A DNA stretch of 64,000 bases from Macrostomum lignano. Taxonomy: Eukaryota. The DNA lies in NCBI GenBank assembly GCA_002269645.1, contig NIVC01000709.1, forward strand, positions 248,001 to 312,000, read 5' to 3'. The position numbers and the translations under genes are program-made. The notes under the pieces were generated by a model. The model was not told where the DNA came from. It saw nothing but the letters and a program-made list of their open reading frames with translations, and made no database searches. The stretch's first letter is position 1. The number at the start of each line of letters is the position of its first letter. Below are positions 29,501 through 51,374 of this stretch, piece after piece.

Positions 29501-31570
29501 GAGAAAGCCATACTGCTCATTATACCCCTGCTCATGTAAGTATATTTGTATAAGCAGTCAGTTTGCTTTGAATTAGATGTTACTAAGTGAGGTTTGATTT
29601 ATTAATCTGAATTTTCCACAGCCTCCTGATGTTCGAATCCGAGTTTCACGCCCGACTGGCCCTTCTGGTGCTGCCGATCGGGCATTTCTCACTGTTCCCG
29701 CTGCTCTTCACCAGCTATGGTATGCGTGTGTTTAGCTGACCATGTGTAGCGACGTTTATACCTAGGTAGTAGTTGTTTAAGGAATTCTTGTAGAGTGTAA
29801 TTACATTAGGGTCATAGCCGGGGGACATATTAGAATCATAGACAGCCAGGGGCAGATTAATGTCAAACAGCCGGGGGCAGATAGGGTCAAACAGCCGGGG
29901 GCAGATTAGGGTCATAGACAGCCTGGGAAGATTAGAGTCATAGACAGCCGGGGGCAGATTAGGGTCATAGACAGCCTGGGAAGATTAGAGTCATAGACAG
30001 CTGGGGGGGCAGATTGAGTCATTGACAGCCGGGGGGCAGATTTAGGGTCATAGACAGCCGCAGGGAGGGGGGATTGGGGTCATAGACAGCTGCGGGCAGA
30101 TTAGGGTCAAACAGCCGGGGGCAGATTAGGGTCATAGACAGCTGGGGGGCAGATTGAGTCATTGACAGCGGGGGGCAGATTTGGTCATAGCCAGCCGGGG
30201 GGGGGCAGATTGGGTCATAGTCATCCAAGGGAGCAGATTGGGTCATAGACATCCGGAGGGGTCAGATTAGGGTCATAGACAGCCGCGGACAGATTGGGGT
30301 CATAGACAGCTGGGGGGCAGATTGTGTCATAGACAGCATAAGGGAGGCAGCTTAGGGTCATAGACAGCCGGATGGCAGATTAGGGTTATAGACAACCATG
30401 GGGGCAGATTCAGGGTCATAGACAGCCTAAGGGAGGGGGCAGCTTAGGGTCCTAGACAGCCATGAGGGCAGATTAGGGTCATAGACAGCCGGGGGCAGAT
30501 TAGGGTCATAGACAGCTGGGGGCAGATTAGGGTCATAGACAACGAGGGGCATATTAGGGTCATAGACAGCGGGGGGGCAGATTAGGGTCATAGACAGCCG
30601 GGGCAGAGTAGGGTCAAAGACAGCCGGGGGCAGATTAGAGTCATAGCCGGGTGGGGGCAGATTAGGGTCAAAGACAGCCGGGGGGCAGATTAGAGTCAAA
30701 GACAGCCGGGGGCAGATTAGGGTCATAGCCGGGGGGCAGATTAGAGTCAAAGACAGCCGGGGGCAGATTAGGGTCATAGCCGGGGGGCAGATTAGGGTCA
30801 TAGCCGGGTGGGGGGCAGATTAAGGTCAAAGACAGCCGGGGGCAGATTAGGGTCATAGACAGCCGGGGGCAGATTAGGGTCCAACAGCCGGGGGCAGATT
30901 AGAGTCATAAACAGCCGAGGGCAGATTGAGTCATTGACAGCCGGGGGCAGATTTAGGGTCATAGACAGCCGCGGGGAGGGGCAGATTGGGGTCATAGACA
31001 GCCGCGGGGAGGGGCAGATTGGGGTCATAGACAGCCGCGGGGAGGGGCAGATTGGGGTCATAGACAGCTGCAGGCAGATTAGGTTCAAAGACAGCCAGGG
31101 GGCAGATTAGGGTCATAGCCGAGTGGGGGGCAGATTAGGGTCATAGACAGCGGGGCGGGGCAGATTAGGGTCAAAGACAGCCGGTGGCAGATTAGGGTCA
31201 AAGACAGCCGGGGGGGGGGGCAGATTAGAGTCACAGCCAAGTTCATAAATATCCTGGCCCGCCCGCAGAGTGCTGGATCAAGTACAGCTTATTCGCCAGC
31301 TACACCCTGGCGACGGCTCACGCAGTCAGCCTCGAATTCCCAGCTTTGCTGTCCGCACCGAGCCGCCTGCTGCCTCCGTGCGTGATCGGCCTGGCCCCGT
31401 TGCTATTGGCAAGTGACTGGCTTCTGCCGCAGCTGCTGGCTCCGCGGCTGCCCTTCCTGCCGCTGATGCTGACCTCCCTGTACTGCGCTGTGTGCCTGGC
31501 CTGGGCCTACTGCACACTGCTTGCCCGCTTCCTGCTGCCTGTCGGTGCCGCGAAGCAGAAAACTGGCTGA
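24047..31570 (+). CDS. ALG8: Dolichyl-PP-Glc1Man9GlcNAc2 alpha-1,3-glucosyltransferase, 11 exons
   Basis: Exons 24047-24135, 24233-24311, 25524-25717, 26184-26311, 26966-27160, 27250-27368, 27834-27948, 28031-28167, 29387-29535, 29622-29719, 31269-31570. All introns GT-AG with compatible phases. Motifs [75 protein letters not shown]; C-terminal KxKxx (KQKTG) ER-retrieval signal. Confidence 0.96.
24432..25505. repeat. Intronic 21-bp minisatellite (ACTGTCACTGCCCCAGTATTC)
   Basis: Highly homogeneous array of about 50 copies in ALG8 intron 2. Confidence 0.97.
25795..26060. repeat. Intronic ~23-bp minisatellite (AAAACAGGTCATAGACAACGTTT)
   Basis: ALG8 intron 3. Confidence 0.9.
26385..26870. repeat. 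(CTGT)n grading into a 21-bp unit (CTCTCTCACTCTCTGTCTTGT)
   Basis: ALG8 intron 4. Confidence 0.95.
27398..27665. repeat. Intronic ~27-bp minisatellite (GGATTGGGCCATAGACAGGTCATAGTC)
   Basis: ALG8 intron 6. Confidence 0.88.
28265..29250. repeat. Intronic 21-bp minisatellite (AGGGTCATAGACAGTAGACA[C/G]T)
   Basis: ALG8 intron 8; an internal higher-order block of variants is repeated. Confidence 0.95.
29805..31235. repeat. Intronic G-rich ~27-bp minisatellite (GGGGGCAGATTAGGGTCATAGACAGCC)
   Basis: ALG8 intron 10; most units contain TTAGGG. Confidence 0.93.
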
Positions 31571-35961: not shown

Positions 35962-37866
35962 ATGAAGCTGTCTGATGAGGCTGAACAGGAGCTGGCCCAG
36001 GTGGAGAGCGTGCTGAAACCGCTGCCCAATGTGAAACTGGAGGCGCGGCTGGACACCACGCTCAGATTTCAGGTTAGTTCTAGGTGTACTTTTAGAGTGC
36101 GCAGGAAACATAATTGTAGTTCTGTCAATCAAAGGTCTCATTATTTTATCCTGGATATGCTGGAACTGCTGAGAGCAATAAAGCAGAACTTGCAATACAG
36201 AATGCAGCAAATCATATTGCCAACAGGAGTGGAACGAATGGGGAGAGCATGCGAGTGCATGAGGCGAACGCATGCTCATTTAATAGTTGGTGCTGCCCTT
36301 GCAGTTCAATCTGCTGGACACCTCTGGATTGAGTCCGGGATCTCGATGCTAATGAAGGGATTTTGAAATTTAGTGTGGGGGTGTTGGGATTTAGTGTGGG
36401 GGTGTTGGGATTTAGTGTGGGGGTGTTGGGATTTAGTGTGGGGGTGTTGGGATTTAGTGTGGGGTGTTGGGATTTAGTGTGGGGGTGTTGGGATTTAGTG
36501 TGGGGGTGTTGGGATTTAGTGTGGGGGTGTTGGGATTTAGTGTGGGGGTGTTGGGATTTAGTATGGGGGTGTTAGGATTTAGTGTGGGGGTGTTGGGATT
36601 TAGTGTGGGGGTGTTGGAATTTAGTGTGGGGTGTTAGGATTTAGGATTTAGTGTGGGGTGTTAGGATTTAGTGTGGGGGTGTTAGGATTTAGTGTGGGGT
36701 GTTAGGATTTAGTGTGGGTGTTAGGATTTAGTGTGAGGTGTTAGGATTTAGTGTGGGGTGTTAGGAATTAGGATTTAGTGTGGGGTGTTAGGAATTAGAA
36801 TTTAGTGTGGGGTGTTAGGATTTAGTGTGGGGGTGTTAGGATTTAGTGTGGGGTGTTAGGATTTAGTGTGGGGTGTTAGGAATTAGGATTTAGTGTGGGG
36901 TGTTAGGATTTAGTGTGGGGGTGTTAGGATTTAGTGTGGGGTGTTAGGATTTAGTGTGGGGTGTTAGGATTTAGTGTGGGGGGTGTTAGGATTTAGTGTG
37001 GGGGTGTTGGGATTTAGTGTGGGGGTGTTGGGATTTAGTGTGGAGATATTGGGATTTAGTGTGAGAATTTTGAAATTTACTGTGTGGGTGTTGGGATTTA
37101 GTGGGAATATTGGGAATTAGTGTGGGGATCTTGGGATTTAGTGTGGGGATATTGGGATTTAGTGTGGGATCTTGGGATTTAGTGTGGGATCTTGGGATTT
37201 AGTGTGGGATCTTGAGATTTAGTGTGATGATCTTGGGATTTAGTGTGATGATCTTGGGATTTGATTGTCGCATAATTGCACCTTGGGATTTAAAAATTCA
37301 ACCTCAAATTACCTCAGCACGTCACCAAATACATTATGTTAATTGAGTCTGTCCAGGAGCATGTTCTACTGTTGATGGGGCTGTTAATAACCCGCGTCCC
37401 GCTGTCATCAGGTGAGCTTCTCCGCCAAGAAGACGCTGATCCTGCGCTGCCACCTACCGAGGGCTATCCCGCCAGCCGGCTGGTCGCGGAGATCCGCAGC
37501 AAGACGCTCAGCCAGAAGCTCACGGACGGCCTGGCCCAGCTGGCCGAGGCCGAGGCCGAGAAGGCCACCGGGGGCCGCAGGTCGCCCGCACGGTTGCCTT
37601 CGTGCACAACTGGCTGCGGGACAACCCGCTCTGCTCGGCCGCCGAGGAGATCGCCGAGATCAAATCGCGCCTGCTGGACAAGCAGGAGGGCGACCGGCTG
37701 AAGCTGCTGCAGGCCGAGTCCCGGGTGCAGCTGACCGCCGCCAAGGCCGGCTACCGCCTGAGCCTGCAGCTCACACTGCCTAATGACTATCCGGAGTCCA
37801 GGGCTGAGGTGAGGCCGGCGACTGACAGACACTAAGAGACAGACAGACAGACAGACACACAGACAC

Positions 37867-37905
<39 letters not shown>

Positions 37906-37956
37906 CTAAGACAGACAGACACACAGACAGACAGACACACAGACAGACAGATACTA

Positions 37957-38005
<49 letters not shown>

Positions 38006-38026
38006 CTAAGACAGACAGACACACTA

Positions 38027-38059
<33 letters not shown>

Positions 38060-39119
38060 CTAAGACAGACAGACACAAAGACAGACAGACAGACAGACAG
38101 ACGGACACTAAGACAGACAGACACTAAGACAGACAGACACTAAGACAGACAGACACAAAGACAGACAGACAGACAGACAGACGGACACTAAGACAGACAG
38201 ACACTAAGACAGACAGACAGACACTAAGACAGACAGACACACAGACAGACAGACACTAAGACAGACAGACACACAGACAGACAGACACTAAGACAGACAG
38301 ACACACAGACAGACACTAAGACAGACAGACACACAGACAGACAGACACTAAGACAGACAGACACACAGACAGACAGACACTAAGACAGACAGACACACAG
38401 ACAGACAGACACTAAGACAGACACTAAGACAGACAGACACTAAGACAGACAGACAGACACTAAGACAGACAGACAGACAGACACTAAGACAGACAGACAC
38501 TAAGACAGACAGACAGACAGACACTAAGACAGACAGACACTAAGACAGACAGCAATATCAGCAGCCAAATGAGCTCCTAATCTCCCCACTCGGACAGGTG
38601 GAGCTGCTCTCCTCCAACCTGCCATCATCGGTTTCACGCCAGGCCGTCGCCCGCTCCGCTGAGATCGCCCGCCGCTGCGTCGAGCCGCCGAGCTACCGTG
38701 GCAAGGACAAGAAGCTTCGCCAGCAGGCGGCGGCCTGGAAGCCCTCGCCCTGCCTGCTGCCCGTTGCCGAATTCGCTTTCAGCTTCCTGCGCAGCTGCGC
38801 CACCCAGCGGTGCCCCGTCTGCGACAAGCCGGCTTTGGCGACTGCGGCCGCTGCGACGGCGACGGCGTCTTCGGTCGAGGACCCTGCCGACCAGCTGGAG
38901 TTCGTGGCCTGCGGCCATTTGTATCACGCCGGCTGTCTGAAGGCCTACATGACTTCGCCACCGTACAGCCCGGATGGCAAGCCGTGCCGGCATGCTGGCT
39001 GCGGGCAGCCGGTCTGTCACGAGCGCTTCCGCACCTCCGCCAAGGTGCTGGAGTCCCGCTGGGCCGCCCAGCAGGCCAAGGAGCGGGAGCTGGCCGAGGT
39101 GGCAGACTTCTTCAACTGA
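35962..39119 (+). CDS. Putative E3 ubiquitin ligase: RWD/UBC-like region(s) + C-terminal RING-H2, 3 exons
   Basis: Exons 35962-36072, 37412-37808, 38598-39119. Two (L)P..YP motifs typical of RWD folds. RING-H2 pattern [15 protein letters not shown]. Exon 2 needs +1 nt in a C-run (~37456) and in a G-run (~37572) to stay in frame. Confidence 0.75.
36365..37275. repeat. G/T-rich ~20-21-bp minisatellite (GGGATTTAGTGTGGGGGTGTT)
   Basis: Intron 1 of the RING gene. Confidence 0.95.
37825..38552. repeat. (GACA)n-based compound microsatellite
   Basis: Intron 2 of the RING gene. Confidence 0.95.
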
Positions 39120-39134
39120 GTGGGGTTCGGATTT

Positions 39135-39395
39135 AAACCCGATCCTGGGATTCCGTGTGGGATATTGGGATTTAGTGCGGGGATCTTGGCATTTAGTGAA
39201 GGGGATTTTAGGATTTAGTGTCGGAATATTGGGATTTTAGTGTGGGAATATTGGCATTTAGTGTGGGGATATTGGCATTTAGTGAAGTGGATCTTGGGAT
39301 TTAGTGAGGGGATCTTGGGATTTAGTGAGGGGATCTTGGGATTTAGTGAGGGGGATTTTGGGATGTGGCGAGGGATCTAAGGATTTAGCTTGATA
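39135..39395. repeat. Degenerate GGGATTTAGTG array in RING gene 3' flank
   Basis: Same core as the array at 36365-37275. Confidence 0.8.
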
Positions 39396-40024
39396 GTTTC
39401 TGGATCTTAGACTCTAATCTAGAGATCGTGGGGGTTTTACATGCTACTGACAAGTAGAGATTGTAACTACAAATGCGGTATGTTCTTATTAAGTCTATTA
39501 TTCCTGCATAATTGTATCCGGGGCTTAGAGAATTAAACTCAGGTGACCCTTCACGTAATCAAATATGGAATTGAGCAGGTGGAGTTGAGCCAGACAATGC
39601 GTGCACTGTGTGAGGCTTCGGAGATTTTTCTGCTCCCGTGCATATGAACCGCCTTTCTATATTACACCCAGTTATATGAGTACCCGTTCGTTCCTTTGGC
39701 ATCGCCGGGCTCCCGGCTAAAAGTGCAGGTGTACCTGTGCTCATTAAGGCATCCGTTTTCGTGCATGTGTTGGGAAGCCTCTCTGTTATTCGAGCCTAAT
39801 TTTGACTAGTTAATGTATTTATATTTGTGTTCCACTTATTATTGTCTAATTGCTTGACTTAATATAATATTTACTGTCAGTGACTTCTAACAGCTATTTA
39901 CCGCTTCAGAGTTACAGATTTCACTCGTGTTGAGTTTGCATTTATTTTTTATTTTTTATATTTGCAATATTTGTTTTATTCTCAGTGCAAATCCCTTTAG
40001 ACACTGGAGGATAGTAGTCCCCTT

Positions 40025-40678
40025 CCTATCCTCACTGATCCCCATTCTATCCTCACTGATCCACGTTCTATCCTCACTGATCCACGTTCTATCCTCACTG
40101 ATCCACGTTCTATCCTCACTGATCCCCATTCTATCCTCACTGATCCCCATTCTATCCTCACTGATCCCCGTTCTATCCTCACTGATCCACGTTCTATCCT
40201 CACTGATCCACGTTCTATCCTCACTGATCCCCATTCTATCCTCACTGATCCACGTTCTATCCTCACTGATCCCCATTCTATCCTCACTGATCCCCATTAT
40301 ATCCTCACTGATCCCCATTCTATCCTCACTGGTCCCTATTCTATCCTCACTCATCCCCATTCTATCCTCACTCATCCCCATTCTATCCTCACTGATCCAC
40401 GTTCTATCCTCACTGATCCCCGTTCTATCCTCACTGATCCACGTTCTATCCTCACTGATCCACGTTCTATCCTCACTGATCCCCATTCTATCCTCACTGA
40501 TCCACGTTCTATCCTCACTGATCCCCATTCTATCCTCACTGATCCCCATTATATCCTCACTGATCCCCATTCTATCCTCACTGGTCCCTATTCTATCCTC
40601 ACTCATCCCCATTCTATCCTCACTCATCCCCATTCTATCCTCACTGATCCCCATTCTATCCTCACTGATCCCTATTCT
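40025..40678. repeat. 21-bp pyrimidine-rich minisatellite (CTATCCTCACTGATCCCCATT)
   Basis: Lies just upstream of the MDC1-like acceptor. Confidence 0.96.
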
Positions 40679-40806
40679 ATATGTAGTCCGAGGATCAGAA
40701 TTTGGGCTGTACCGTCCCTGATCCCCTCAATGTACCCTTCACAAGTTATGCCCACCTACTCAAAAAAACAAATTCGGACTCAAAGCTTCCTCAAAATTGT
40801 CTTCAG

Positions 40807-43800
40807 GCGGCCAGCTTCCCCTGCACTCAGGTGCTGTGCACGCAGCAGTTCGACGCCTGCGCCGACTCTGACAATGACGACAACAATGTCTCCGCTGACG
40901 GCCGAGGCCAGCCTCTGGCCCAGCTGGTGCTGATGGGGCCGGCGGGCGGGGCCCAGCATCCGCTGTACACCGGCGAGAACACGGTCGGCCGCATGGACTC
41001 CTGCGATGTCCGGATCGAAGACCCCTCGGTGTCCGGCCGGCACGCCTGTCTGGAGCTCGGCCGCGGCCAGCAGCTGGTGTACGACCTGCACTCCACCAAC
41101 CGGAGCAGGAAGAACGACATGCCGCTGAAGCCGGAGATTCGCTACGACCTTCGAGATGGCGACCAGCTGAGGTTCGGCTTCGTCATGTGCCGCTTCGAAC
41201 TGCTGAAGCCGCCGGCCAAACCTTCCAAGCCTTCAAAGTCGCCGCAGCCGCAGTCGCCGAGACTCCTGGCTGAGGACGCTGACGGCGGCGGAGACGAGAC
41301 GCGCGAGGCGCTGCTGCTGGAGCAGAGCCAGTTCTTCGTGCCGACAACGCCGCCGCCGGCAGGCGAGGACGACGACAACCAGGAGACGGATATCGAGGAG
41401 GATGCTGGGACTTCCACCGCTGCAGCTGCTGATGGCCGGCCCCCTGCTGCCACGGTGCTGCTGGCTGAAGACAGTCACAACAGCAACGTCGTGCAAGATG
41501 ATGAGCTCCCAGCGCATCAGCAGTCCGCCGCTGCTGCTGCTGCGGTTGTAGTCCCGGACTCGATTCTGCTCATGCAGTCCACGGAGCGCCTGCACGAAGA
41601 CGATGCGGACGTTCAGGGCGCGTCCATTGCGGCTACGGAGCCGCTGCCAGCCGCCACGGCAGCTGTGGTCGACAGCAGCAGCACGTCTTTGATCGCCGCT
41701 GCCACTGACACGCTGCCGGTGCAGGCAAGCCGCGACGTCTCCTTGGCGGTGCCCACTGAGGCCATCAAGGAAACTGCGCCTCTGCCCGACTCCAGCGCTC
41801 TTGACGAGACTTTGCCGTTGACGACCGCCTCTCCCGCTGATGCCGTCACCGTCACCACTGCCACGGCCGTGCGCGCTGCCACGGGCGCTTTCCGTCTGTT
41901 CGGCGACGTCCCCAACGGCAACGCCAGCACCGTGCCTAAAAATTCCTTCGCTGGCGATTCCGCTCTGTTCTCAGCCGAGACCCAGCGGCTGGACTGGGCC
42001 GCTCCGGCCGCATCGGCTGCGGCTGCGACCGCGGCGGCGGCGGAGGACGTCGGGGATGACGACGAAAACGACGCGGCGCTGTTCGGCATGGAGACGCAGG
42101 CCCTGCCGTCTGGGTCTGCGGTCACGCCACCGGCGGCTGCGGCGACTGAGGCTGACAAAGCCAAGCAGCTGGCCGAATTTGATGAAGCTGATGTTGTCGC
42201 GGAGACGCCTTGCAAGGCGGCAGAGAGCGAAGATCCGCAGCTTCTGAGCCAGGCTACTCAAGCGGCTGTGAGCGACCAGCCGCCATCGGACTCACTATCG
42301 CTGCCCATCGACCGGGGGCTGGTCGGCGCCGTTCGGCGACCTCGGATCGATTCGTCGCCGTCCTCGTCGTCTCCGTCCAGTCCGGAAGCGGCGGCGGCGG
42401 CTCCGGCTGTGTCGGGGTCTGCAGCTTCTGGCAGCAGCGGTGCCGATCGCGGCGGTTGGCTTAGCAAAGCCCATCTCGCTTTGCCGTTGACTGCCAAACC
42501 TGCAGCGGCCAGTCGGGGCGGTCCCGGCGGTGGCAGGGGCCGCGGCAGGGGCAGAGGCGCCCGGCAATCTGTCACAACCGGAAGTGACAATGCGGAGCCG
42601 GAAGTAGCCGGAAGTGACGCAGTCCGCGGCGGTAGAGGAAGAGGGAGAGGCGCCAGGCAATCTGTCACAACCGGAAGTGACAATGCGGAGCCGGAAGTAG
42701 CCGGAAGTGACGCAGTCCGCGGCGGTAGAGGCAGAGGGAGAGGAAGAGGGAGAGGCGCCAGGCAATCTGTCACAACCGGAAGTGCTAATGCGGAGCCGGA
42801 AGTAGCCGGAAGTGACGCAGTCCGCGGCGGTAGAGGCAGAGGGAGAGGAAGAGGGAGAGGTGCCAGGCAATCTGTTGCAACCAGAGAGGACAGTCCAAAG
42901 CCGGAAGTGGCCGGAAGCGACAGAGGCAAAATAAGTCAGCAGGCTGGTCAAACTGGATGTGCAAGTACGAAACCGGAAGTGGCCGGAAGCGACGCAGTCC
43001 GTGACGGCAGTGGAAGACCTGCTAAGCGATCCCGAGCTGCCTCTTCTCTCCCCGATGCCGGCAGCTGCTCAGCCGATGCAGCTGGCGGTGAAGCTGTAGG
43101 CCCAGGGTCTCCCGCTCAGGCAAAGTCCATCAAACTGACGACTGACCCGGCACCAGGCGACAGCGCCTCGCCGGCTTCAATCTCTGCCAGGAGGAGCGCG
43201 CGCGGGAGTCCCAGCCCTTCTCCAGGCAGACCGACTCGAGCCTCTGCGCCGCCTTGCAATGCTTTGGCAGGCGCTGGTCCCTGCGGCTCTCCTGCAGCAA
43301 CAAAGACTGCTAGCTCAGATGTAGGAGAAATACAGGCTGACAGGCTATCCAGGAGTCAAACAAAGACTAGCAGCGCAGCCAGTGAGAAAGGCGAGTCTCA
43401 AGTGTCCGAAGTGTCCGAATCGCAAACTTCAGAAGCTGGCGTAACGAAACGGGCCCGCGGCAGGCCAGCCAGGGGCCGGACGACAAAGACTGCTGATTTA
43501 GACGAGCCATCCGACGCGTCGACTTCAACAAGCCAAGCCGCTGCGACCACCGTGCCTAAGAAATCTCGAGGTAGGGTGACAAAGAGTCAAACAAAGACCG
43601 GTGCTAGTGCGGAAGCTGGTCCTGCGGAGGATTCAGCGAAGCAGGAACCAGAATCCACCTCTCGCAGTAGGGGAAGAGCGACAAAGAGTCAAACAAAGAC
43701 CGGTGCTAGTGCGGAAGCTGGTCCTACGGAGGATTCAGCGAAGCAGGAACCAGAATCCACCTCTCGCGGTAGGGGCAGAGCGACAAAGAGTCAAACAAAG

Positions 43801-44772
43801 ACGGAGGCTGCAGAGGCCAAACCTGCAGAGAACTCGGTGAACCAAGAATCGGAATCGGTTGTTTCTAAGAAATCTCGCGGTAGGGGCAGAGTGACAAAGA
43901 GTCAAACAAAGACTAGCGCTCCTGCCGAGGAACCATCTATTGACGGAGCGGCCAGCCAGTCCGCCTCTGAGAGGTCGTCGACGACTTCCCGCGGCAGGCG
44001 AGGTCGCCAAACAAAGACTGTTTCCGTGGACGACGACGACGACGGTGCTTCGTCGACGCGCGGCAGCGAAGTCGGGAGCGCGTCAAACAAACGGCCACGG
44101 AAGCGCGCAACGAGTGTCGGCGACGAGGCCGAAGCCGACGAGCCGGCAAGGAAGCGGTCGACCTCGAGGAAGGCCGCCGCCGCCGCCGCCGATGCAGCGG
44201 ACAGCGTTGCGGTGATGTTCACCGGCGTCGACGAGGCGACTCTGGCGCCGATTGTCCGGCGCCTCGGCGGCCGGGTGACCGAGGTGCCGTCAGAGGCGAC
44301 GCACCTGGTGACAGACCGGGTACGGCGCACCGTAAAGCTGCTCTGCTGCGTGGCCCGCGGCGTCCCCGTCGTCAGCGTCGACTGGCTGACGGACAGCCGC
44401 TCGGCCGGCCGCTTTCTCGACTCCGCCGCCGGCTACCCGGTGGCCGGGGAGGCCGACTTCGGCGTCAACCTGACACAAGTCTGCGAGCGGGCGCGCCGCG
44501 GCCAGCAGCTGCTGTCCGGCCAGACCGTGGCCGCCACGACGTCCGTCCGGCCGGACCCGGCCAGTCTCGCCCAGATCGTCGCCAGCGCCGGCGGTCGCTT
44601 CGTCGGAGTCGGTGCGGCGGCATTCAAAGCCTGCAGCCTCGTGTTCACCTGCGAGGCCGACGCCAAGGCGCTGGCGCGACTGCCGGCCGGGGTGACGGCG
44701 CTGCAGGTCGAAGCGCTGCTGTCGGGCGTGCTGAAGGGCCGCCTGGACACCGAGGCCTTCCGCATGCGATGA
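40807..44772 (+). CDS. MDC1: Mediator of DNA damage checkpoint 1-like protein (FHA, long disordered linker, tandem BRCT)
   Basis: One long open frame. FHA: GENTVGR..SVSGRHA..DLHSTN..LRDGDQLRFG. BRCT1: VMFTG..LGG..ATHLV..RRTVKLLC..VSVDWL. BRCT2: LLSG..IVASAGG..LLSGVLK. The start codon is unresolved; the start given is an in-frame AG acceptor. Confidence 0.85.
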   Translation, partial: AASFPCTQVLCTQQFDACADSDNDDNNVSADGRGQPLAQLVLMGPAGGAQHPLYTGENTVGRMDSCDVRIEDPSVSGRHACLELGRGQQLVYDLHSTNRSRKNDMPLKPEIRYDLRDGDQLRFGFVMCRFELLKPPAKPSKPSKSPQPQSPRLLAEDADGGGDETREALLLEQSQFFVPTTPPPAGEDDDNQETDIEEDAGTSTAAAADGRPPAATVLLAEDSHNSNVVQDDELPAHQQSAAAAAAVVVPDSILLMQSTERLHEDDADVQGASIAATEPLPAATAAVVDSSSTSLIAAATDTLPVQASRDVSLAVPTEAIKETAPLPDSSALDETLPLTTASPADAVTVTTATAVRAATGAFRLFGDVPNGNASTVPKNSFAGDSALFSAETQRLDWAAPAASAAAATAAAAEDVGDDDENDAALFGMETQALPSGSAVTPPAAAATEADKAKQLAEFDEADVVAETPCKAAESEDPQLLSQATQAAVSDQPPSDSLSLPIDRGLVGAVRRPRIDSSPSSSSPSSPEAAAAAPAVSGSAASGSSGADRGGWLSKAHLALPLTAKPAAASRGGPGGGRGRGRGRGARQSVTTGSDNAEPEVAGSDAVRGGRGRGRGARQSVTTGSDNAEPEVAGSDAVRGGRGRGRGRGRGARQSVTTGSANAEPEVAGSDAVRGGRGRGRGRGRGARQSVATREDSPKPEVAGSDRGKISQQAGQTGCASTKPEVAGSDAVRDGSGRPAKRSRAASSLPDAGSCSADAAGGEAVGPGSPAQAKSIKLTTDPAPGDSASPASISARRSARGSPSPSPGRPTRASAPPCNALAGAGPCGSPAATKTASSDVGEIQADRLSRSQTKTSSAASEKGESQVSEVSESQTSEAGVTKRARGRPARGRTTKTADLDEPSDASTSTSQAAATTVPKKSRGRVTKSQTKTGASAEAGPAEDSAKQEPESTSRSRGRATKSQTKTGASAEAGPTEDSAKQEPESTSRGRGRATKSQTKTEAAEAKPAENSVNQESESVVSKKSRGRGRVTKSQTKTSAPAEEPSIDGAASQSASERSSTTSRGRRGRQTKTVSVDDDDDGASSTRGSEVGSASNKRPRKRATSVGDEAEADEPARKRSTSRKAAAAAADAADSVAVMFTGVDEATLAPIVRRLGGRVTEVPSEATHLVTDRVRRTVKLLCCVARGVPVVSVDWLTDSRSAGRFLDSAAGYPVAGEADFGVNLTQVCERARRGQQLLSGQTVAATTSVRPDPASLAQIVASAGGRFVGVGAAAFKACSLVFTCEADAKALARLPAGVTALQVEALLSGVLKGRLDTEAFRMR

Positions 44773-44774
44773 CG

Positions 44775-45735
44775 GGATTGGTTGATAAACTGGGAGAATT
44801 GACTGATAAACTGGGAGAATTGACTGATAAACTGGGAGAATTGACTGATAAACTGGGAGAATTGACTGATAAACTGGGAGAATTGACTGATAGACTGGGA
44901 GAATTGACTGATAAACTGGGAGAATTGACTGATAGACTGGGAGAATTGACTGATAAACTGGGAGAATTGACTGATAAACTGGGAGAATTGACTAATAAAC
45001 TGGGAGAATTGACTGATAAACTGGGAGAATTGACTGATAAACTGGGAGAATTGACTGATAGACTGGGAGAATCGATTGATAAACTGGGAGAATTGACTGA
45101 TAGACTGGGAGAATTGACTGATAGACTGGGAGAATTGACTGATAAACTGGGAGAATTGACTGATAAACTGGGAGAATTGACTGATAGACTGGGAGAATCG
45201 ATTGATAAACTGGGAGAATTGACTGATAAACTGGGAGAATTGACTGATAGACTGGGAGAATTGACTGATAAACTGGGAGAATTGACTGATAAACTGGGAG
45301 AATTGACTGATAAACTGGGAGAATTGACTGATAAACTGGGAGAATCGATTGATAGACTGGGAGAATTGACTGATAAACTGGGAGAATTGACTGATAAACT
45401 GGGAGAATTGACTGATAAACTGGGAGAATTGACTGATAAACTGGGAGAATTGACTGATAAACTGGGAGAATTGACTGATAAACTGGGAGAATTGACTGAT
45501 AAACTAGGAGAATTGAAGGATAAACTGTGAGAACTGATTGATAAACTGGGAGAATTGAGGGATAAACTGGGAGAACTGAGGGATAAACTGTGAGAACTGA
45601 TTGATAAACTGGGAGAATTGAGGGATAAACTGGGAGAACTGAGGGATAAACTGGGAGAATTGATTGATAAACTGGGAGAACTGAGGGATAAACTGGGAGA
45701 ACTGAGGGATAAACTGGGAGAATTGATTGATAAAG
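44775..45735. repeat. 21-bp minisatellite (TTGACTGATAAACTGGGAGAA)
   Basis: Starts immediately after the MDC1 stop codon. Confidence 0.97.
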
Positions 45736-46394
45736 TTTTTCTCGGCTAAGCGCATTTTGTCTTCATTTGTTCATTCTAGCAACTCTCTTTATTCCCACAA
45801 ATAAATTTATTTTTGTATTGCTGCATTTTATATTGATTATTTTGCTTGAGCTCCTGTGCTCGGTTGATCACCTAAGCATGCTAATGTATCAGCTTATATA
45901 ATAAATTATTTATGGCTCATTAATTATCCCGATAGATGCCGCAGGAGCCTGCGCTGCATCTCAGGCATAAATTGTCCCGCGCTGTTATTTGGCTTGCTTC
46001 TTCCTTTGTTGCTATTTTTGCGTAGGGGAGCTGCATGTAGATTTAACTGTCGAATGCCAGACGGTATGTATCGAAAATCAATTTTTATTAGTAAATATTT
46101 GGCACTAATTAAACCCGTTTAATAAAGTTAAAAGAATTCTTTATTTTTAAAGGCTCAGGTCACCAAAAATGGATTCAATCGATCTAAAAAGCCTTTTGTT
46201 CATTCAAAGTTGAATGACTTGCAGGGAGTCGCATTTTAATGAATTGAAATTTGACTATCAAAATTCTAATTGTTTCCACTTCAATCAATTTTTAGTCTCA
46301 GAGCAACTGGATAATTTGCTAGATTAACTTGAGTTGAATGCTAATGGTTCTAATCTCAGCGGCTACTTGCTAAGGCAATCATGCATCTCGATCC

Positions 46395-47975
46395 CACATG
46401 TACTTTGATCCCTGCATTTCAATCCCTACATGTACTTTGATCCCTGCATCTCAATCCCTACATGTACTCCCTGCATCTCAATACCTACATGTACTCCCTG
46501 CATCTCAATACCTACATGTACTCCCTGCATTTCAATACCTACATGTACTTTGATCCCTGCATCTCAATCCCTACATGTACTTTGATCCCTGCATCTCAAT
46601 CCCTACATGTACTCCCTGCATCTCAATACCTACATGTACTCCCTGCATCTCAATACCTACATGTACTCCCTGCATTTCAATACCTACATGTACTTTGATC
46701 CCTGCATCTCAATCCCTACATGTACTTTGATCCCTGCATCTCAATCCCTACATGTACTTTGATCCCAGCATCTTTATCCCTACATGTACTTTGATCCCTG
46801 CATCTCAATCCCTACATGTACTTTGATCCCAGCATCTTTATCCCTACATGTACTTTGATCCCTGCATCTCAATCCCTACATGTACTCCCTGCATCTCAAT
46901 CCCTACATGTACTCCCTGCATCTCAATACCTACATGTACTCCCTGCATTTCAATACCTACATGTACTTTCATCCCTGCATCTCAATCCCTACATGTACTT
47001 TGATCCCAGCATCTTTATCCCTACATGTACTTTGATCCCTGCATCTCAATCCCTACATGTACTCCCTGCATCTCAATACCTACATGTACTCCCTGCATCT
47101 CAATACCTACATGTACTCCCTGCATTTCAATACCTACATGTACTTTGATCCCTGCATCTCAATCCCTACATGTACTTTGATCCCTGCATCTCAATCCCTA
47201 CATGTACTCCCTGCATCTCAATACCTACATGTACTCCCTGCATCTCAATACCTACATGTACTCCCTGCATTTCAATACCTACATGTACTTTGATCCCTGC
47301 ATCTCAATCCCTACATGTACTTTGATCCCTGCATCTCAATCCCTACATGTACTTTGATCCCAGCATCTTTATCCCTACATGTACTTTGATCCCTGCATCT
47401 CAATCCCTACATGTACTCCCTGCATCTCAATCCCTACATGTACTCCCTGCATCTCAATACCTACATGTACTCCCTGCATTTCAATACCTACATGTACTTT
47501 GATCCCAGCATCTTTATCCCTACATGTACTTTGATCCCAGCATCTTTATCCCTACATGTACTTTGATCCCTGCATCTCAATCCCTACATGTACTCCCTGC
47601 ATCTCAATACTTACATGTACTCCCTGCATTTCAATACCTACATGTACTTTGATCCCTGCATCTTTATCCCTACATGTACTTTGATCCCTGCATCTCAATC
47701 CCTACATGTACTTTGATCCCAGCATCTTTATCCCTACATGTACTTTGATCCCTGCATCTCAATCCCTACATGTACTCCCTGCATCTCAATACCTACATGT
47801 ACTCCCTGCATTTCAATACCTACATGTACTTTGATCCCTGCATCTCAATCCCTACATGTAATTTAATCCCTTAATCTTGATCCCTACATGTACTTGATCC
47901 CTGTATCTCGATCCCTACATGTACTTGATCCCTGCATCTCGATCTCTACATGTACTTTCATCCCTGCATCTCAAT
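46395..47975. repeat. 28/32-bp minisatellite with TACATGTA palindrome and higher-order repeats
   Basis: Units TACATGTACT(TTGAT)CCCTGCAT(C/T)TCAAT(A/C)CC; blocks of variants recur. Confidence 0.96.
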
Positions 47976-49231
47976 CTCGACTCTTTCTGCATCACCTTTA
48001 GCTCTTATTAATCTAGCTTCTCTCTCACCGAAAGTTGCTGCCCCACTCCTCGCAACAAGATTTGATATCGCAAGCTGCTTACATGCAGCTCCCTCCTAGT
48101 TCATGTTGGCTGGCACAGTTCTAAGGAGGCTTCTGCCATTCATGTGGCGGCACTGCCAGCCCCACTGCACCTCTCTGCCCATGCAGGTGTATCCTGTGCA
48201 CAGGGCAGGCTCTGCGGCCTACGCTCGTTCACTCGTGTTCTCCGGCCTTGCCTTAATTTGCTTTCAGGGCGCTCCTGGCGGGTATCCAAGTGTCGAATGT
48301 CACGGGTGAGGTGAGCGCGCGACCTCTGTGTGCGAACTGGAGCCTAATCAGTGAGGGCATCATATTGCCCGGCCATTAGCCTACAGCCGATTGACAAGTA
48401 TTTCTACAGCACCGAATTAGCGCTTAACTGCAGTTCAGTGCGCAGTTTTGCCCCCCCCCCCCCTGGCAACTCGTTATCTGCAGAACCCGCGCTTGAGAAA
48501 GGCGTAGGAGTTTTTGTCGCCAAGCAGCCAAGCGGAGCCATTAAAAACGGTTAGCCTAAACTTGTGGAAAACTGCAAGTAATGTAGCTGCGCTGTCTTGC
48601 CAATGGCGATGTCATTTTTTCACATTATTCAAGCAATTGCTTGCTGTTCAGAACTCTCCGCCTTCCCTGCACTCAGGTCCCGTATTCCTTCACTTTTTTA
48701 GCTCTTTCCTCGCGTGTCTCCTGGCAAGTTTGTCTTCTCCCGTGAATTGTTTCAGTCGAGAGCATCCTCTGCAGAAGCGGAGCAGATCTTCTTGAGCGTC
48801 CCGCAGCCATTGGCTCGTGAGGGAATCTGGGGGGGGGGAGCAGCCCGCGGAGCGGACAGTCCAGCGCACATCCGGGATCTCCCTGCTCCCTCCCCCACTC
48901 AGTTCCCCATCGCTCACCCGCCGTCCCACCAGTCCCTGTGCGCACACAGCCCGCGTACACTGCTGCACTGGCCTGTAGGAGTAGGCGTGGAATTGGCTGG
49001 GGGGGGGGGGGCAGGCCGGCCATAAATGAATCTGCCTGCCCCTAAGGTGAAGGCAGAGCCACGCCTAGACCCCCCGGTGCAATCCGAATTCGCGGTCTCT
49101 CCTAACAAAATCAAATCGAATGGAATGCCTCCTGTTGCATCCTTAGATCTTCGGCTGCAGCCTCTTCATCTCTTCCAGCCTCTCCTAGAAGCAGCGCCGG
49201 CAGCAGCAGCCGTTGACGACGCCAGCCGTCG

Positions 49232-51374
49232 ATGCTGAAGAGGTCGCTGCTGCGGATCCTGCATCGTCTGCTGTGCCGACGTCGCCCCCTCAGCCTCATG
49301 CTGGGCCACCTTCGCCACTGCGGCCGCTGGCTGGCCCCGCTGCTGCTTCTGACTGCCGCCACCTGCCTCATCGTCTCAACGGCGCTGACCTCCTCGGCAG
49401 CGGCCGCCGCTGCACCGCCTCCGCCAGCGGTACCGCAGCAGCAGCAGCAGCCGCAACCTCAACAGCAGCAACAAGCTCCGCTTTCTCAGGCTCCAGCAGC
49501 TGCATCAAATCGCTCGGCTGCTCAGCCCGCTGAAGTGCTTCAGCAGCAGCCGTCGGAGCCACAGGCGCCTTCTTTGAACCGGCAGCCGCTCGCAGTCACC
49601 GACTTCCTTCGCCGCGTGGCCGACGCCAGCCATCAGGACCCCGGCGGCCGGCTGATGAGCTCGTTGCGCTCCAAGCTGCCTCTGCTGAACCTCCTGGCCA
49701 CCTCCAGCGCCGATCCAAGGAGCCTCTCGGAGCGCGCCAAGGCCTGCGCCGGCGCCCGCGCCAAGTCGTTCGTCCTGCGCTACGTGCAGAACTTCGCCTA
49801 CGTGCACAACGAGCCGGACCTGTGCGCCGGCCAGCTGCTGCTGCTCACCGCCGTGCACAGCAACGCCAAGAACTTCAACAGGCGCGCCACCATCCGCCGG
49901 ACCTGGGGCTCCCTGCGCTACGTCGGCGCCAACCGCCTTCAGCTGGTCTTCTTCCTGGGCCTGCCGGGAAACCCGGAGCACCAGGCCGAGATTGACGCAG
50001 AGAGTCGCCGGCATCGGGACATTGTGCAGGTGAGTCTGAGCTGTGCTTAGGCGCCATTTTCAGCTGCTGGAGTTCATGCGTTTGGCGCCAATTGCAGTCA
50101 GTTTGAGTTCATGCGTTTGGCGCCAATTGCAGCCGGTTTGAGTTCATGCGTTTGGCGCCAATTGCAGCCGGTTTGAGTTCATGCGTTTGGCGCCAATTGC
50201 AGCCGGTTTAAGTTCATGCGTTTGGCGCCAATTGCAGTCAGTTTGAGTTCATGCGTTTGGCGCCAATTGCAGCCGGTTTGAGTTCATGCGTTTGGCGCCA
50301 ATTGCAGCCGGTTTGAGTTCATGCGTTTGGCGCCAATTGCAGCCGGTTTGAGTTCATGCGTTTGGCGCCAATTGCAGCCGGTTTGAGTTCATGCGTTTGG
50401 CGCCAATTGCAGCCGGTTTGAGTTCATGCGTTTGGCGCCAATTGCAGCCGGTTTAAGTTCATGCGTTTGGCGCCAATTGCAGTCAGTTTGAGTTCATGCG
50501 TTTGGCGCCAATTGCAGCCGGTTTGAGTTCATGCGTTTGGCGCCAATTGCAGCCGGTTTGAGTTCATGCGTTTGGCGCCAATTGCAGCCGGTTTGAGTTC
50601 ATGCGTTTGGCGCCAATTGCAGCAGGTTTGAGTTCATGAATTTGGCGCTAATTGCAGCCAGTTTGAGTTCATGCATTTGGCGCCAATTGCAGCCAGTTTG
50701 AGTTCATGCATTTGGCGCCAATTGCGGTCGCTTTATTTTCCGGATTGGTGACGCGTAAAGCAACTCACCTCTTATTGCCCCCCCCCCTACAGCTGGACTA
50801 CCGAGAGCACTATCGCAACATGTCGCTGAAGCACCTGAGCGTCTACGAGTGGATGATCCTCCACTGCCAGTCGGCGCAGTACCTCGCCAAAGTGGACGAC
50901 GACACCTTCACGGACGTGGTGCACCTAGCTGCGTTTCTGCAGCACAGCCCGCCCGACGGCTTCTACTGCTCCAACACCCGCGGCGCCAAGCCGCAGCGGC
51001 TGAGGCGCGGTCCGAAGGCCAAGTGGGCGGTCAACCGGGCGGAGTTCGCGGCGGCCCGCTACCCCGCCTACTGCGAGGGCTTCGGCTACGCGGTGCGCGC
51101 CTCCCGCCTGCCCGACCTGTACCTGTGCTCTCTGTTCAGCAAGTTCTTCTGGATTGACGATGTCTACGTGACTGGCGTGCTGGCCGCGGCCGCGAAGGTG
51201 CCGCTGGCCGGGTTCTGGGCCGGACACGGGTACACCGGACAGCTGCCCAGCCTGGCGTCCGAGAAGATTCTCGACTACATCTTTCTGGTGGCCGATCACA
51301 ACGAATTCCTGGAGGTTGTCTGGCACCGGCTGTGGCGGTCGGTGCTGCAGTTCAGTCTGGACCTGACGCTGTGA
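49232..51374 (+). CDS. GT31-family beta-1,3-galactosyltransferase (type II membrane), 2 exons
   Basis: Exon1 49232-50029 (N-terminal TM, Gln-rich stem, RRATIRRTWG, LVFFLG). Exon2 50793-51374 (YRNMSLK, AKVDDDTF, YPAYCEGFGY, WIDDVYVTG). Phase-0 GT-AG intron. Confidence 0.93.
50075..50730. repeat. 35-bp intronic minisatellite (TTTGAGTTCATGCGTTTGGCGCCAATTGCAGCCGG)
   Basis: Fills the single intron of the GT31 gene. Confidence 0.96.

What the first reader, a model, noticed from the sequence alone, without database searches (positions are those of the whole stretch)
40700..40940. MDC1-like ORF has no start codon of its own; a spliced-leader AUG could supply it
Seen: the first in-frame ATG (40933) lies inside the first FHA strand (PLAQLVLM, matching the PVGRLHIF segment of human MDC1 as I recall it), so it would truncate the domain. 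Two phase-0 acceptors, TTCAG|GCG (40807) and CTCAG|GTG (40831), lie just upstream after a 650-bp pyrimidine-rich array. The sequence that follows (CTQVLCTQQFD) resembles the N-terminal TQ motif by which MDC1 binds its own FHA. I found no convincing upstream ATG exon. Known: flatworm spliced leaders end in AUG, which can act as initiator. Inference: trans-splicing at 40807 would give M-AASFPCTQ.., making this DNA-damage gene dependent on trans-splicing for translation.
Basis: partly seen in the sequence, partly recalled or inferred. Interest (0 to 1): 0.72.

Follow-up and report, generated by a model that had tools for sequence, protein, structure and literature searches.

The report
Flatworm MDC1 gene borrows start codon
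The DNA-damage scaffold gene MDC1 of the flatworm Macrostomum lignano has no usable start codon in the genome and almost certainly gets its AUG from the spliced leader added by trans-splicing; this mechanism has been known in flatworms since 2006, so the gene is a clean new example and not a new phenomenon.

Summary
The window is Macrostomum lignano NIVC01000709.1 (Mlig_3_7). Bases 40807-44772 (+) form one intronless 1321-codon frame encoding an MDC1 orthologue. Its FHA domain and its tandem BRCT both match MDC1 best among solved structures. The frame is open back to a TAG at 40684, but its first in-frame ATG is codon 43 (40933). Starting there would delete the conserved N-terminal TQ motif, the acidic run and FHA strand beta1. 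Third-position GC jumps from 0.45 to 0.89 exactly at 40804-40807, where a CTTCAG| acceptor fits the published M. lignano trans-splice motif [T/C]TNCAG. MDC1 orthologues start M-D-F-P-C-T-Q-K-L or similar, and this exon starts AAS-F-P-C-T-Q-V-L. The GenBank CDS (PAA78066.1, "partial") and both paralogous copies begin exactly at that base. The M. lignano spliced leader ends in ...GCATG, so trans-splicing gives AUG|GCG GCC = M-A-A-S-F-P-C-T-Q in frame. I did not see spliced-leader reads or a peptide; that step is inferred. The main rival is an older UniProt model that cis-splices the upstream RWD/RING gene onto the same acceptor through a weak donor. Use of the leader's AUG as initiator is established (Cheng et al. 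2006), so this is a new member of a known kind, of modest interest.

The parts
40807..44772 (+). Single coding exon of the M. lignano MDC1 orthologue: 1321 codons plus TGA. The genomic frame has no initiator ATG.
   Evidence: Open frame. Pfam finds FHA plus BRCT_2/RTT107_BRCT_5/BRCT. It is 100% identical to PAA78066.1, which begins AASFPCTQ.
40801..40806 (+). CTTCAG 3' splice acceptor, the proposed spliced-leader trans-splice site. The exon starts at 40807 in phase 0.
   Evidence: Fits [T/C]TNCAG (PMC8629364). It is the only such motif within 880 nt upstream, against a density of 0.003 per nt. The GC3 change point falls at 40804-40807. The annotated CDS starts here in 3 copies.
40681..40800 (+). 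Proximal outron: unique AT-richer sequence with out-of-frame ATGs (40730, 40748) that trans-splicing would remove.
   Evidence: GC3 is 0.45 here against 0.83-0.89 downstream. It is 125/126 identical in the paralogous copies. The upstream ORFs were listed.
40018..40680 (.). 21-bp pyrimidine-rich minisatellite in the intergenic/outron region.
   Evidence: Tandem Repeats Finder: 31.6 copies at 93% match. It is 75% pyrimidine. Copy number varies between paralogous copies, so its length is not constrained.
40825..40887 (+). N-terminal TQ motifs (T7-Q8-V-L and T12-Q13-Q-F) followed by an acidic run (D16-N27). This is the equivalent of the MDC1 pThr4 / pT+3 Ile / acidic stretch.
   Evidence: T7 and Q8 are invariant in alignment A1. 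FPCTQVL aligns with tunicate FPCTQKL/FPCTQQL. The function of the human motif is described in PMC3351161 and PMC3351156.
40918..41202 (+). FHA domain. Strand beta1 is 40918-40932.
   Evidence: AlphaFold2 model with strands E38-42 through E126-132. The Foldseek top 12 hits are all MDC1 FHA structures, TM-score (target-normalised) 0.79-0.90. HMMER against PDB gives 3va1 at E=7.8e-10.
40933..40935 (+). First in-frame genomic ATG (codon 43), immediately after beta1.
44179..44748 (+). C-terminal tandem BRCT.
   Evidence: Pfam. The best PDB hits are MDC1 BRCT 2azm/2etx/2ado at E about 2e-33; the next best is Brc1 at 6e-12.
35962..39119 (+). Upstream same-strand RWD/RING-like gene. Exons are about 35962-36072, 37412-37809 and 38598-39119, with TGA at 39117-9. 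It is frameshifted in this copy.
   Evidence: tblastn of the intact paralogue PAA80590.1. The distance from its stop to the acceptor is 1687 nt, or 776 nt after subtracting tandem repeats.
39099..39104 (+). Non-consensus donor gag|GTGGCA, which the older fused gene model (A0A1I8ILZ6) joins to the 40807 acceptor.
   Evidence: The junction ...KERELAE|AASFPCTQ appears in P0155. The donor context is shown.

Best explanation
The MDC1 orthologue of Macrostomum lignano is an intronless gene whose mRNA 5' end is made by spliced-leader (SL) trans-splicing at the CTTCAG| acceptor ending at 40806. The 35-nt SL ends in ...UUGCAUG. Joined to GCG GCC AGC..., its terminal AUG is in phase 0 and becomes the initiator, giving M-A-A-S-F-P-C-T-Q-V-L-C-T-Q-Q-F-D... 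This restores the short N-terminus that MDC1 proteins have: a TQ phospho-acceptor with a hydrophobic residue at +3, an acidic run, and then the FHA domain that binds that phospho-threonine in trans.

Shown here:
- the organism;
- the acceptor motif;
- the phase;
- the absence of any in-frame genomic ATG before codon 43;
- the start of the coding signal at 40807;
- homology of the first residues to MDC1 N-termini;
- an annotated CDS 5' end at exactly this base.

Inferred:
- that SL reads map here;
- that ribosomes start at the SL AUG in M. lignano. This has been demonstrated only in Schistosoma mansoni.

A consequence is that full-length MDC1 can be translated only from the trans-spliced mRNA. 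The precursor carries out-of-frame AUGs and no in-frame one.
For: - Organism: the window is identical to M. lignano NIVC01000709.1. The SL sequence ends in ATG and 30% of genes are trans-spliced (PMC8629364). [quoted passage not shown]
- Acceptor: cttCAG|G fits [T/C]TNCAG.
- Coding boundary: the GC3 change point is at 40804-40807 (0.45 to 0.89). In 40807-40932, 35 of 42 third positions are G/C, P=3.5e-7 against the upstream rate.
- Homology: phmmer alignments to MDC1 of Phallusia, Athalia and Diprion start at query residue 4 against subject residue 3. N-termini MDFPCTQKL, MEYPATQMF and MDQTQLL compare with AAS-FPCTQVL. T7 and Q8 are invariant.
- Starting at Met43 would delete the TQ motif, the acidic run and beta1.
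- Annotation: the transcript-based annotation cuts mRNA 5' ends at SL-read peaks (PMC5730564). Its 5'-partial CDS starts exactly at this base in three copies.
- No phase-compatible ATG exon with a GTRAG donor lies upstream.
- Precedent: the SL AUG is in frame in 28% of S. mansoni trans-spliced mRNAs and is required by more than 40 cDNAs (Cheng et al. 2006, as summarised in PMC9851317).
Against: - I could not inspect SL-containing reads, 5' RACE products, ribosome footprints or peptides for this site. GenBank calls the CDS 'partial' and does not describe it as SL-initiated.
- The three copies are 99% identical, and multi-mapping reads make their annotations non-independent.
- The SL AUG has U at -3, although it has G at +4 here.
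- An older model (A0A1I8ILZ6) reaches the same acceptor by cis-splicing from the upstream gene.
- Use of the SL AUG has not been shown experimentally in M. lignano.
Confidence: 0.8

Rival explanations
1. Cis-spliced fusion. The ORF is translated as the C-terminal part of a 1612-aa RWD/RING-MDC1 fusion. It would be made by splicing from a donor seven codons before the upstream gene's stop (gag|GTGGCA, 39099) to the same acceptor at 40807, and would use the upstream gene's ATG at 35962.
For: UniProt A0A1I8ILZ6 (older ML2 annotation) has exactly this junction...KERELAE|AASFPCTQ, and it is in frame. The genes share a strand and lie 1.7 kb apart, or 776 nt without repeats. They could therefore share a precursor transcript.
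Against: - The donor GTGGCA lacks the GT[G/A]AG consensus found at 65% of M. lignano donors. The verified local donors read GTTAGT, GTGAGG and GTGAGT.
- The same model contains another odd internal gap (DADVQ|APATAAVV), typical of ab initio prediction.
- The later evidence-based annotation keeps a complete 343-aa RWD protein with its own stop, and a separate MDC1-like gene.
- In this window's copy the RWD gene is frameshifted twice, so a fusion could not be translated here.
- MDC1 orthologues have a free N-terminus 3-10 residues before the TQ.
Confidence: 0.07
2. Internal start. Translation begins at the first genomic ATG (40933), and 40807-40932 is 5' UTR. The product would be an N-terminally shortened protein.
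For: It is the first in-frame ATG and has G at +4. A +1-frame short ORF (ATG at 40874 or 40886) ends in TGA overlapping this ATG (TGATG), an arrangement that could allow re-initiation.
Against: - The 42 codons upstream have coding-type composition (GC3 0.83, P=3.5e-7).
- They align with the conserved MDC1 N-terminus.
- The product would lack strand beta1, which lies in the middle of the six-stranded sheet that forms the dimer interface (PMC3351156).
Confidence: 0.06
3. Other origins of the start: non-AUG initiation on an un-trans-spliced mRNA (for example TTG at 40702, which has A at -3 and G at +4), a distant unrecognised cis 5' exon, or an assembly error hiding an ATG.
For: - The frame is open for 40 codons upstream of the acceptor.
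- Weak ATG mini-exons exist: 39473 MRY|gttctt, 39644 MNRLSILHP|gttata, and 40730 MYPSQ|gttatg with a 62-nt intron.
- The assembly has indels nearby, in the RWD gene.
Against: - The upstream 40 codons have non-coding composition (GC3 0.45) and no homology.
- Orthologues start at the TQ motif.
- Two out-of-frame ATGs (40730, 40748) precede the ORF on an unspliced leader.
- All three genomic copies agree base for base around the acceptor.
- A 5'-partial CDS that starts at the acceptor implies that no upstream exon is present in the transcript models.
Confidence: 0.05

Closest known systems
Schistosoma mansoni mRNAs that use the spliced leader's 3'-terminal AUG as initiator methionine (Cheng, Cohen, Ndegwa & Davis 2006, J Biol Chem 281:733); 'slORFs' (slORFfinder, PMC9851317)
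   Same: A flatworm spliced leader ending in AUG. A trans-splice acceptor in phase with the main ORF. No genomic in-frame AUG that would give the full-length conserved protein.
   Different: A different flatworm order (Macrostomorpha) and a different gene. The evidence here is genomic, comparative and annotation-based, not cDNA-based or functional. Use of the leader's AUG has not been tested experimentally in M. lignano.
Human/mouse MDC1 N-terminal module: pThr4 motif, acidic stretch and FHA (PMC3351161, PMC3351156; PDB 3UNN, 3UOT, 3VA1)
   Same: The order is the same: a TQ with a hydrophobic residue at +3 (TQAI against TQVL / TQQF), an acidic run, an FHA domain, a long disordered middle and a C-terminal tandem BRCT. 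The FHA phosphate-binding Arg, Ser and Asn are conserved (R62, S76 and N98, invariant in alignment A1).
   Different: - The Met is not genome-encoded.
- There are two TQ motifs, not one.
- The Lys after the conserved Ser (human K73) is Gly.
- I saw no SDTD repeats.
- The middle region carries RG-rich 93-105-bp tandem repeats.
- Identity is only 30-38%.
Downstream genes of M. lignano operons (Ustyantsev & Berezikov 2021, PMC8629364)
   Same: A same-strand upstream gene lies at a repeat-adjusted distance of 776 nt, under their 1-kb criterion. The intergenic space is filled with minisatellites. The gene is conserved and of the stem-cell type, a class in which 85% of genes are trans-spliced.
   Different: The distance is far from the 100-bp mode. 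In one paralogous copy the two genes carry different transcriptional-unit prefixes. I have no evidence of co-transcription.

Membership tests
mRNAs initiated at the spliced leader's AUG (flatworm) | The host performs spliced-leader trans-splicing and its leader ends in AUG. | tested here: met
   The window is M. lignano NIVC01000709.1. The leader is CGGTCTCTTACTGCGAAGACTCAATTTATTGCATG (PMC8629364).
mRNAs initiated at the spliced leader's AUG (flatworm) | [quoted passage not shown] | tested here: met
   cttCAG|GCG fits YTNCAG. No phase-compatible ATG exon with a GTRAG donor was found. The only modelled cis donor (39099) is non-consensus.
mRNAs initiated at the spliced leader's AUG (flatworm) | The leader's AUG is in frame with the conserved ORF, with no stop between them. 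| tested here: met
   AUG|GCG GCC AGC continues in phase 0 and stays open for 1321 codons.
mRNAs initiated at the spliced leader's AUG (flatworm) | No genomic AUG can give the full-length protein. | tested here: met
   The first in-frame ATG is codon 43. It lies downstream of the conserved TQ motif, the acidic run and FHA strand beta1.
mRNAs initiated at the spliced leader's AUG (flatworm) | Spliced-leader-containing cDNA or reads join the leader to this acceptor. | not testable with these tools
   The evidence is only indirect. The 5'-partial CDS of the annotation, which is bounded by spliced-leader reads where available, starts exactly at 40807 in 3 copies.
mRNAs initiated at the spliced leader's AUG (flatworm) | Translation from the leader's AUG is demonstrated. 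| not testable with these tools
   No Ribo-seq or proteomics data are accessible. The precedent exists only in S. mansoni.
MDC1 orthologue | An N-terminal FHA domain closest to MDC1's. | tested here: met
   Pfam FHA at 4.6e-13. The PDB top hit is MDC1 3va1. The Foldseek top 12 hits are all MDC1 FHA structures.
MDC1 orthologue | A C-terminal tandem BRCT of the MDC1 type. | tested here: met
   2azm/2etx/2ado at E about 2e-33, 21 orders of magnitude better than Brc1 or PAXIP1.
MDC1 orthologue | An extreme N-terminal TQ motif with hydrophobic +3, followed by an acidic stretch. | tested here: met
   T7-Q8-V-L and T12-Q13-Q-F, then DACADSDNDDNN. T and Q are invariant across 12 orthologues.
MDC1 orthologue | Internal SDT(D) and TQXF docking repeats. 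| tested here: inconclusive
   By eye in the translation I saw scattered TQ/SQ sites (ETQRLDW, METQALP, SQFF) and SQTKT repeats, but no clear SDTD array.
Downstream gene of an M. lignano operon | A same-strand upstream gene lies within 1 kb after subtracting repeats, and the downstream gene is trans-spliced. | tested here: inconclusive
   The distance criterion is met: 1687 nt minus 911 nt of repeats gives 776 nt. Trans-splicing is inferred. Co-transcription is untested, and the meaning of the '.gN' gene-name suffix is ambiguous.

The most novel reading that the evidence does not exclude
Loss of the genomic start codon may have made production of functional MDC1 strictly conditional on spliced-leader trans-splicing. 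The choice between trans-splicing, read-through cis-splicing to the upstream RWD/RING gene (giving a fusion) and scanning to Met43 (giving a form without the TQ motif and beta1, which could not dimerise through the pThr-FHA contact) would then act as a regulatory switch for the DNA-damage response in neoblasts. The evidence does not exclude this, and nothing here shows that the alternative products exist.
Probability: 0.1. Interest if true: 0.55.

Novelty: new member of a known kind. Interest (0 to 1): 0.3.

Why it matters
Practical value: the three GenBank entries for this gene are labelled 'partial', and two of them are also truncated at 621-623 aa. With the spliced leader's AUG the CDS is complete: M plus 1321 aa in this copy, running from the FHA domain to the tandem BRCT. 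[quoted passage not shown]

Conceptual value: this is a clean case where orthologues fix the protein's N-terminus to within one or two residues, so the donated methionine is needed for the full-length conserved protein and is not merely one possible start. It extends initiation at the leader's AUG from parasitic flatworms to an early-branching free-living flatworm. It also suggests that many 5'-partial M. lignano models that begin at YTNCAG| acceptors are complete proteins. It does not change what is known about trans-splicing.

Tried and rejected
- Word-indexed protein searches with the whole ORF and with the FHA region found no relatives. The exhaustive HMMER search then found them.
- Exact look-ups of the Met43-start ORF and of a transposase ORF found nothing.
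- Exact look-ups of the full-length translations of the other two copies were not in the collection.
- Names of proteins encoded in the window itself are hidden.
- Neither the spliced leader nor a spliced-leader RNA gene is in the window. Rfam found nothing at gathering threshold.
- Supplementary tables of PMC5816591 and full-text searches do not mention these gene IDs or MDC1.
- Acceptor 40831 was rejected. It does not fit YTNCAG, would remove the conserved FPCTQ, and is not the annotated 5' end.
- The GTGAGG donor at 39610 could join only to a GAG| acceptor at 40907, skipping 100 nt of coding-type sequence. I rejected it as chance.
- I first read the '.g2' suffix as 'second gene of a transcriptional unit'. 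I dropped it as evidence because the paper's naming rule is ambiguous.
- I ran no further search on looking for other flatworm MDC1 orthologues, because the main conclusion does not depend on it.
Full report
WHAT IS THERE

The window is eukaryotic, rich in minisatellites, and has GC-rich coding sequence. On the + strand one reading frame is open from 40687 (after TAG 40684-6) to TGA 44770-2. Pfam finds an N-terminal FHA domain and C-terminal BRCT domains. Against solved structures, the FHA region hits mouse and human MDC1 FHA best (3va1, E=7.8e-10). The last 220 residues hit the MDC1 tandem BRCT at E about 2e-33; the next families, Brc1 and PAXIP1, reach only 6e-12 and 2e-10. An AlphaFold2 model of the first 143 residues was built on a 12-sequence alignment (mean pLDDT 84.5, pTM 0.71). 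Its top 12 Foldseek hits are all MDC1 FHA structures, with target-normalised TM-scores of 0.79-0.90. The gene is an MDC1 orthologue, and in this genome it has no introns.

CHECKING THE OBSERVATION

The first in-frame ATG is at 40933, and none lies between 40687 and 40932. In the structure model, strand beta1 is residues 38-42 counted from 40807 (AQLVL, 40918-40932), and Met43 follows directly. HMMER pairs QPLAQLVLMG with MDC1 EPVGRLHIFSG. Starting at 40933 would therefore remove beta1. That strand lies in the middle of the six-stranded sheet that forms the MDC1 FHA dimer interface (PMC3351156). The 'pyrimidine-rich array' is a 21-bp minisatellite at 40018-40680, with 31.6 copies and 75% pyrimidine.

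WHERE CODING STARTS

Third-position G+C is 0.45 in the 40 open codons upstream of 40807 and 0.83-0.89 from 40807 onward. A likelihood change-point scan places the switch at 40804-40807. In 40807-40932, 35 of 42 third positions are G/C (P=3.5e-7 at the upstream rate). The only [T/C]TNCAG motif in the 880 nt upstream of the ORF ends exactly at 40806 (cttCAG|GCG). The motif's density in the window is 0.003 per nt. That motif is the top enriched motif at M. lignano spliced-leader (SL) acceptors (PMC8629364).

WHICH ORGANISM, AND WHAT THE PUBLIC ANNOTATION SAYS

An exhaustive HMMER search found a 623-aa protein that is 100% identical to the query over residues 1-621 and begins at the query's first residue, AASFPCTQ. 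It is PAA78066.1, 'hypothetical protein BOX15_Mlig013015g2, partial [Macrostomum lignano]'. Its locus, NIVC01000709.1:278807-300700, is base-for-base identical to window 30807-52700. The window is therefore M. lignano assembly Mlig_3_7, and 40807 is contig position 288807.

Two further copies exist in this partly duplicated genome, on NIVC01001892.1 and NIVC01000573.1. In both, the annotated gene starts at the first base after the same cttCAG, no in-frame ATG lies upstream, and the first Met is codon 43.

The annotation is transcript-based. [quoted passage not shown] TransDecoder then called the ORFs (PMC5730564). A 5'-partial ORF must reach the transcript's 5' end, so these transcript models start within 0-2 nt of the acceptor. 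SL trans-splicing is the known process that places an mRNA 5' end exactly at a 3' splice site. The three copies are 99% identical and reads multi-map, so I count this as one line of evidence, not three.

HOMOLOGY FIXES THE N-TERMINUS

MDC1 proteins of tunicates (Phallusia, MDFPCTQKLDDDLDE), sawflies (Athalia MEYPATQMFVNDDENEE; Diprion MDYPATQMF) and many unnamed relatives, apparently vertebrate (MDQTQLLDWDE...), all begin 3-10 residues before a TQ that is followed by an acidic run and then the FHA domain. The flatworm exon begins AAS-FPCTQVL-CTQQFD-ACADSDNDDNN. HMMER aligns its residue 4 to residue 3 of the tunicate and insect proteins, and T7 and Q8 are invariant in the alignment.

In human MDC1 this threonine (T4) is phosphorylated by ATM and binds the FHA domain of a second molecule. 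Ile at +3 and the acidic stretch contribute to binding (PMC3351161 and PMC3351156). The FHA phosphate-binding Arg, Ser and Asn are conserved here as R62, S76 and N98. The protein's true N-terminus must therefore lie within a residue or two of 40807, where the genome reads ...CTT CAG|GCG and offers no ATG.

MECHANISM

The single M. lignano SL is CGGTCTCTTACTGCGAAGACTCAATTTATTGCATG. Spliced to 40807 it gives ...UUGCAUG|GCGGCCAGC, that is AUG GCG GCC AGC = M-A-A-S, in frame for 1321 more codons. Thirty per cent of M. lignano genes, and 85% of neoblast-enriched genes, are SL trans-spliced. [quoted passage not shown] 2006, as summarised).

The organism, motif, phase, coding boundary, homology and annotated 5' end are shown here. 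The presence of SL reads at this site and initiation at the SL AUG in this species are inferred. I put this explanation at about 0.8.

RIVALS

(a) Cis-spliced fusion. The older UniProt entry A0A1I8ILZ6 (1612 aa) joins the upstream RWD/RING-like gene to the same acceptor...KERELAE|AASFPCTQ, from donor gag|GTGGCA at 39099.
- The donor is non-consensus, and the model has another implausible internal gap.
- The later evidence-based annotation keeps a complete 343-aa RWD protein and a separate MDC1 gene.
- In this window's copy the RWD gene carries two frameshifts.
I give a real, abundant fusion about 0.07.

(b) Initiation at Met43. This is contradicted by the coding composition and conservation of codons 1-42 and by the loss of beta1. 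I give it about 0.06, possibly as a minor product.

(c) Non-AUG initiation, a hidden exon or an assembly error. The upstream 40 codons look non-coding. Out-of-frame ATGs at 40730 and 40748 would intercept scanning on an unspliced leader. All three copies agree around the site. The ATG mini-exons that can be constructed all have poor donors. I give this about 0.05.

CONTEXT

The upstream gene is on the same strand. Its stop (39117-9) is 1687 nt from the acceptor, or 776 nt after removing two minisatellites, and the figure is about 770 nt in all three copies. This is under the 1-kb repeat-adjusted criterion used to call M. lignano operons. An ATTAAA lies at 39532. Operon membership is possible but not shown.

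COMPARISON WITH WHAT IS KNOWN, AND NOVELTY

The gene meets every testable criterion for an SL-AUG-initiated flatworm mRNA. The two experimental criteria, the SL junction and translation from the SL AUG, could not be tested here. The mechanism has been known since 2006 and has been flagged for Macrostomum, so this is a new member of a known kind.

Its value is mainly in annotation. The three 'partial' entries are complete once the SL Met is added. Two of them are also wrongly truncated by a 22-nt alignment gap inside a coding tandem repeat. It is also a neat case in which orthologues pin the N-terminus tightly enough to make the donated Met necessary for the full-length protein. Interest is about 0.3.

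Noticed in passing
window 42666-42687 (within tandem repeats 42553-42921): The GenBank protein PAA78066.1 (623 aa, ending ...ARQSVSRK) is reproduced exactly by deleting 22 nt here. The deletion shifts the frame into a stop. The genomic frame actually continues for 1321 codons to the BRCT domains. The 621-aa paralogue PAA62876.1 has the same artefactual ending.
   Followed up: yes
window 35962-39119 (+), especially about 37459-37471 and the G5 run at 37573-37577: The upstream RWD/RING-like gene is intact in the other two genomic copies (343 aa). In this copy, exon 2 changes frame twice relative to the paralogues, and GenBank annotates only a 56-aa tail (38949-39119). This is either a decaying duplicate or long-read homopolymer errors.
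   Followed up: partly
window 40730-40933 (+1 frame relative to the MDC1 ORF): A +1-frame ORF with ATGs at 40730, 40748, 40874 and 40886 ends in a TGA that overlaps the first genomic in-frame ATG (TGATG at 40931-40935). Trans-splicing removes the first two ATGs. The last two remain between the spliced leader's AUG and Met43, and could support termination-reinitiation at Met43.
   Followed up: no
window 42553-42921 and 43578-43802; L002 and L003 equivalents: The disordered middle of the protein is encoded by 93-105-bp and 102-bp tandem repeats (RGRGRG...ARQSVTTGSDNAEPEVAGSDAV, and KSQTKTGASAEAGP...). Protein length differs between copies: 1321 aa here and 1285 aa in the other two.
   Followed up: partly
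UniProt A0A1I8ILZ6 (P0155); window 39099 to 40807: The older M. lignano gene set fuses the RWD/RING gene and the MDC1 gene into a 1612-aa 'RING-type E3 ubiquitin transferase' through a non-consensus donor. This is probably an artefact of the downstream ORF having no ATG.
   Followed up: partly
window 36368-37262, 37837-38552, 39141-39388, 44783-45734, 46382-47976, 50050-50720 and others: Nearly every intron and intergenic spacer near these genes is filled by a 16-32-bp minisatellite. One array starts 11 nt after the MDC1 stop codon. The copy numbers of the two arrays between the RWD and MDC1 genes differ between the paralogous loci.
   Followed up: partly
window 8230-9168 (-), 16990-18432 (-): Two ORFs that look like transposases by eye, not confirmed with Pfam: a 312-aa piggyBac-like ORF and an intact 480-aa ATG-initiated MULE/FAR1-like ORF.
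   Followed up: no
window 4324-4845 (+), 10200-10904 (-), 26938-31567 (+), 49232-51374 (+), 54878-55477 (-): Other genes in the window: a PAN-domain exon, a GST/FAXC-like gene, ALG6/ALG8 glucosyltransferase exons, a beta-1,3-galactosyltransferase with its own ATG at 49232 (donor gtgcag|GTGAGT at 50030), and an exon encoding an ALK/LTK glycine-rich domain.
   Followed up: partly
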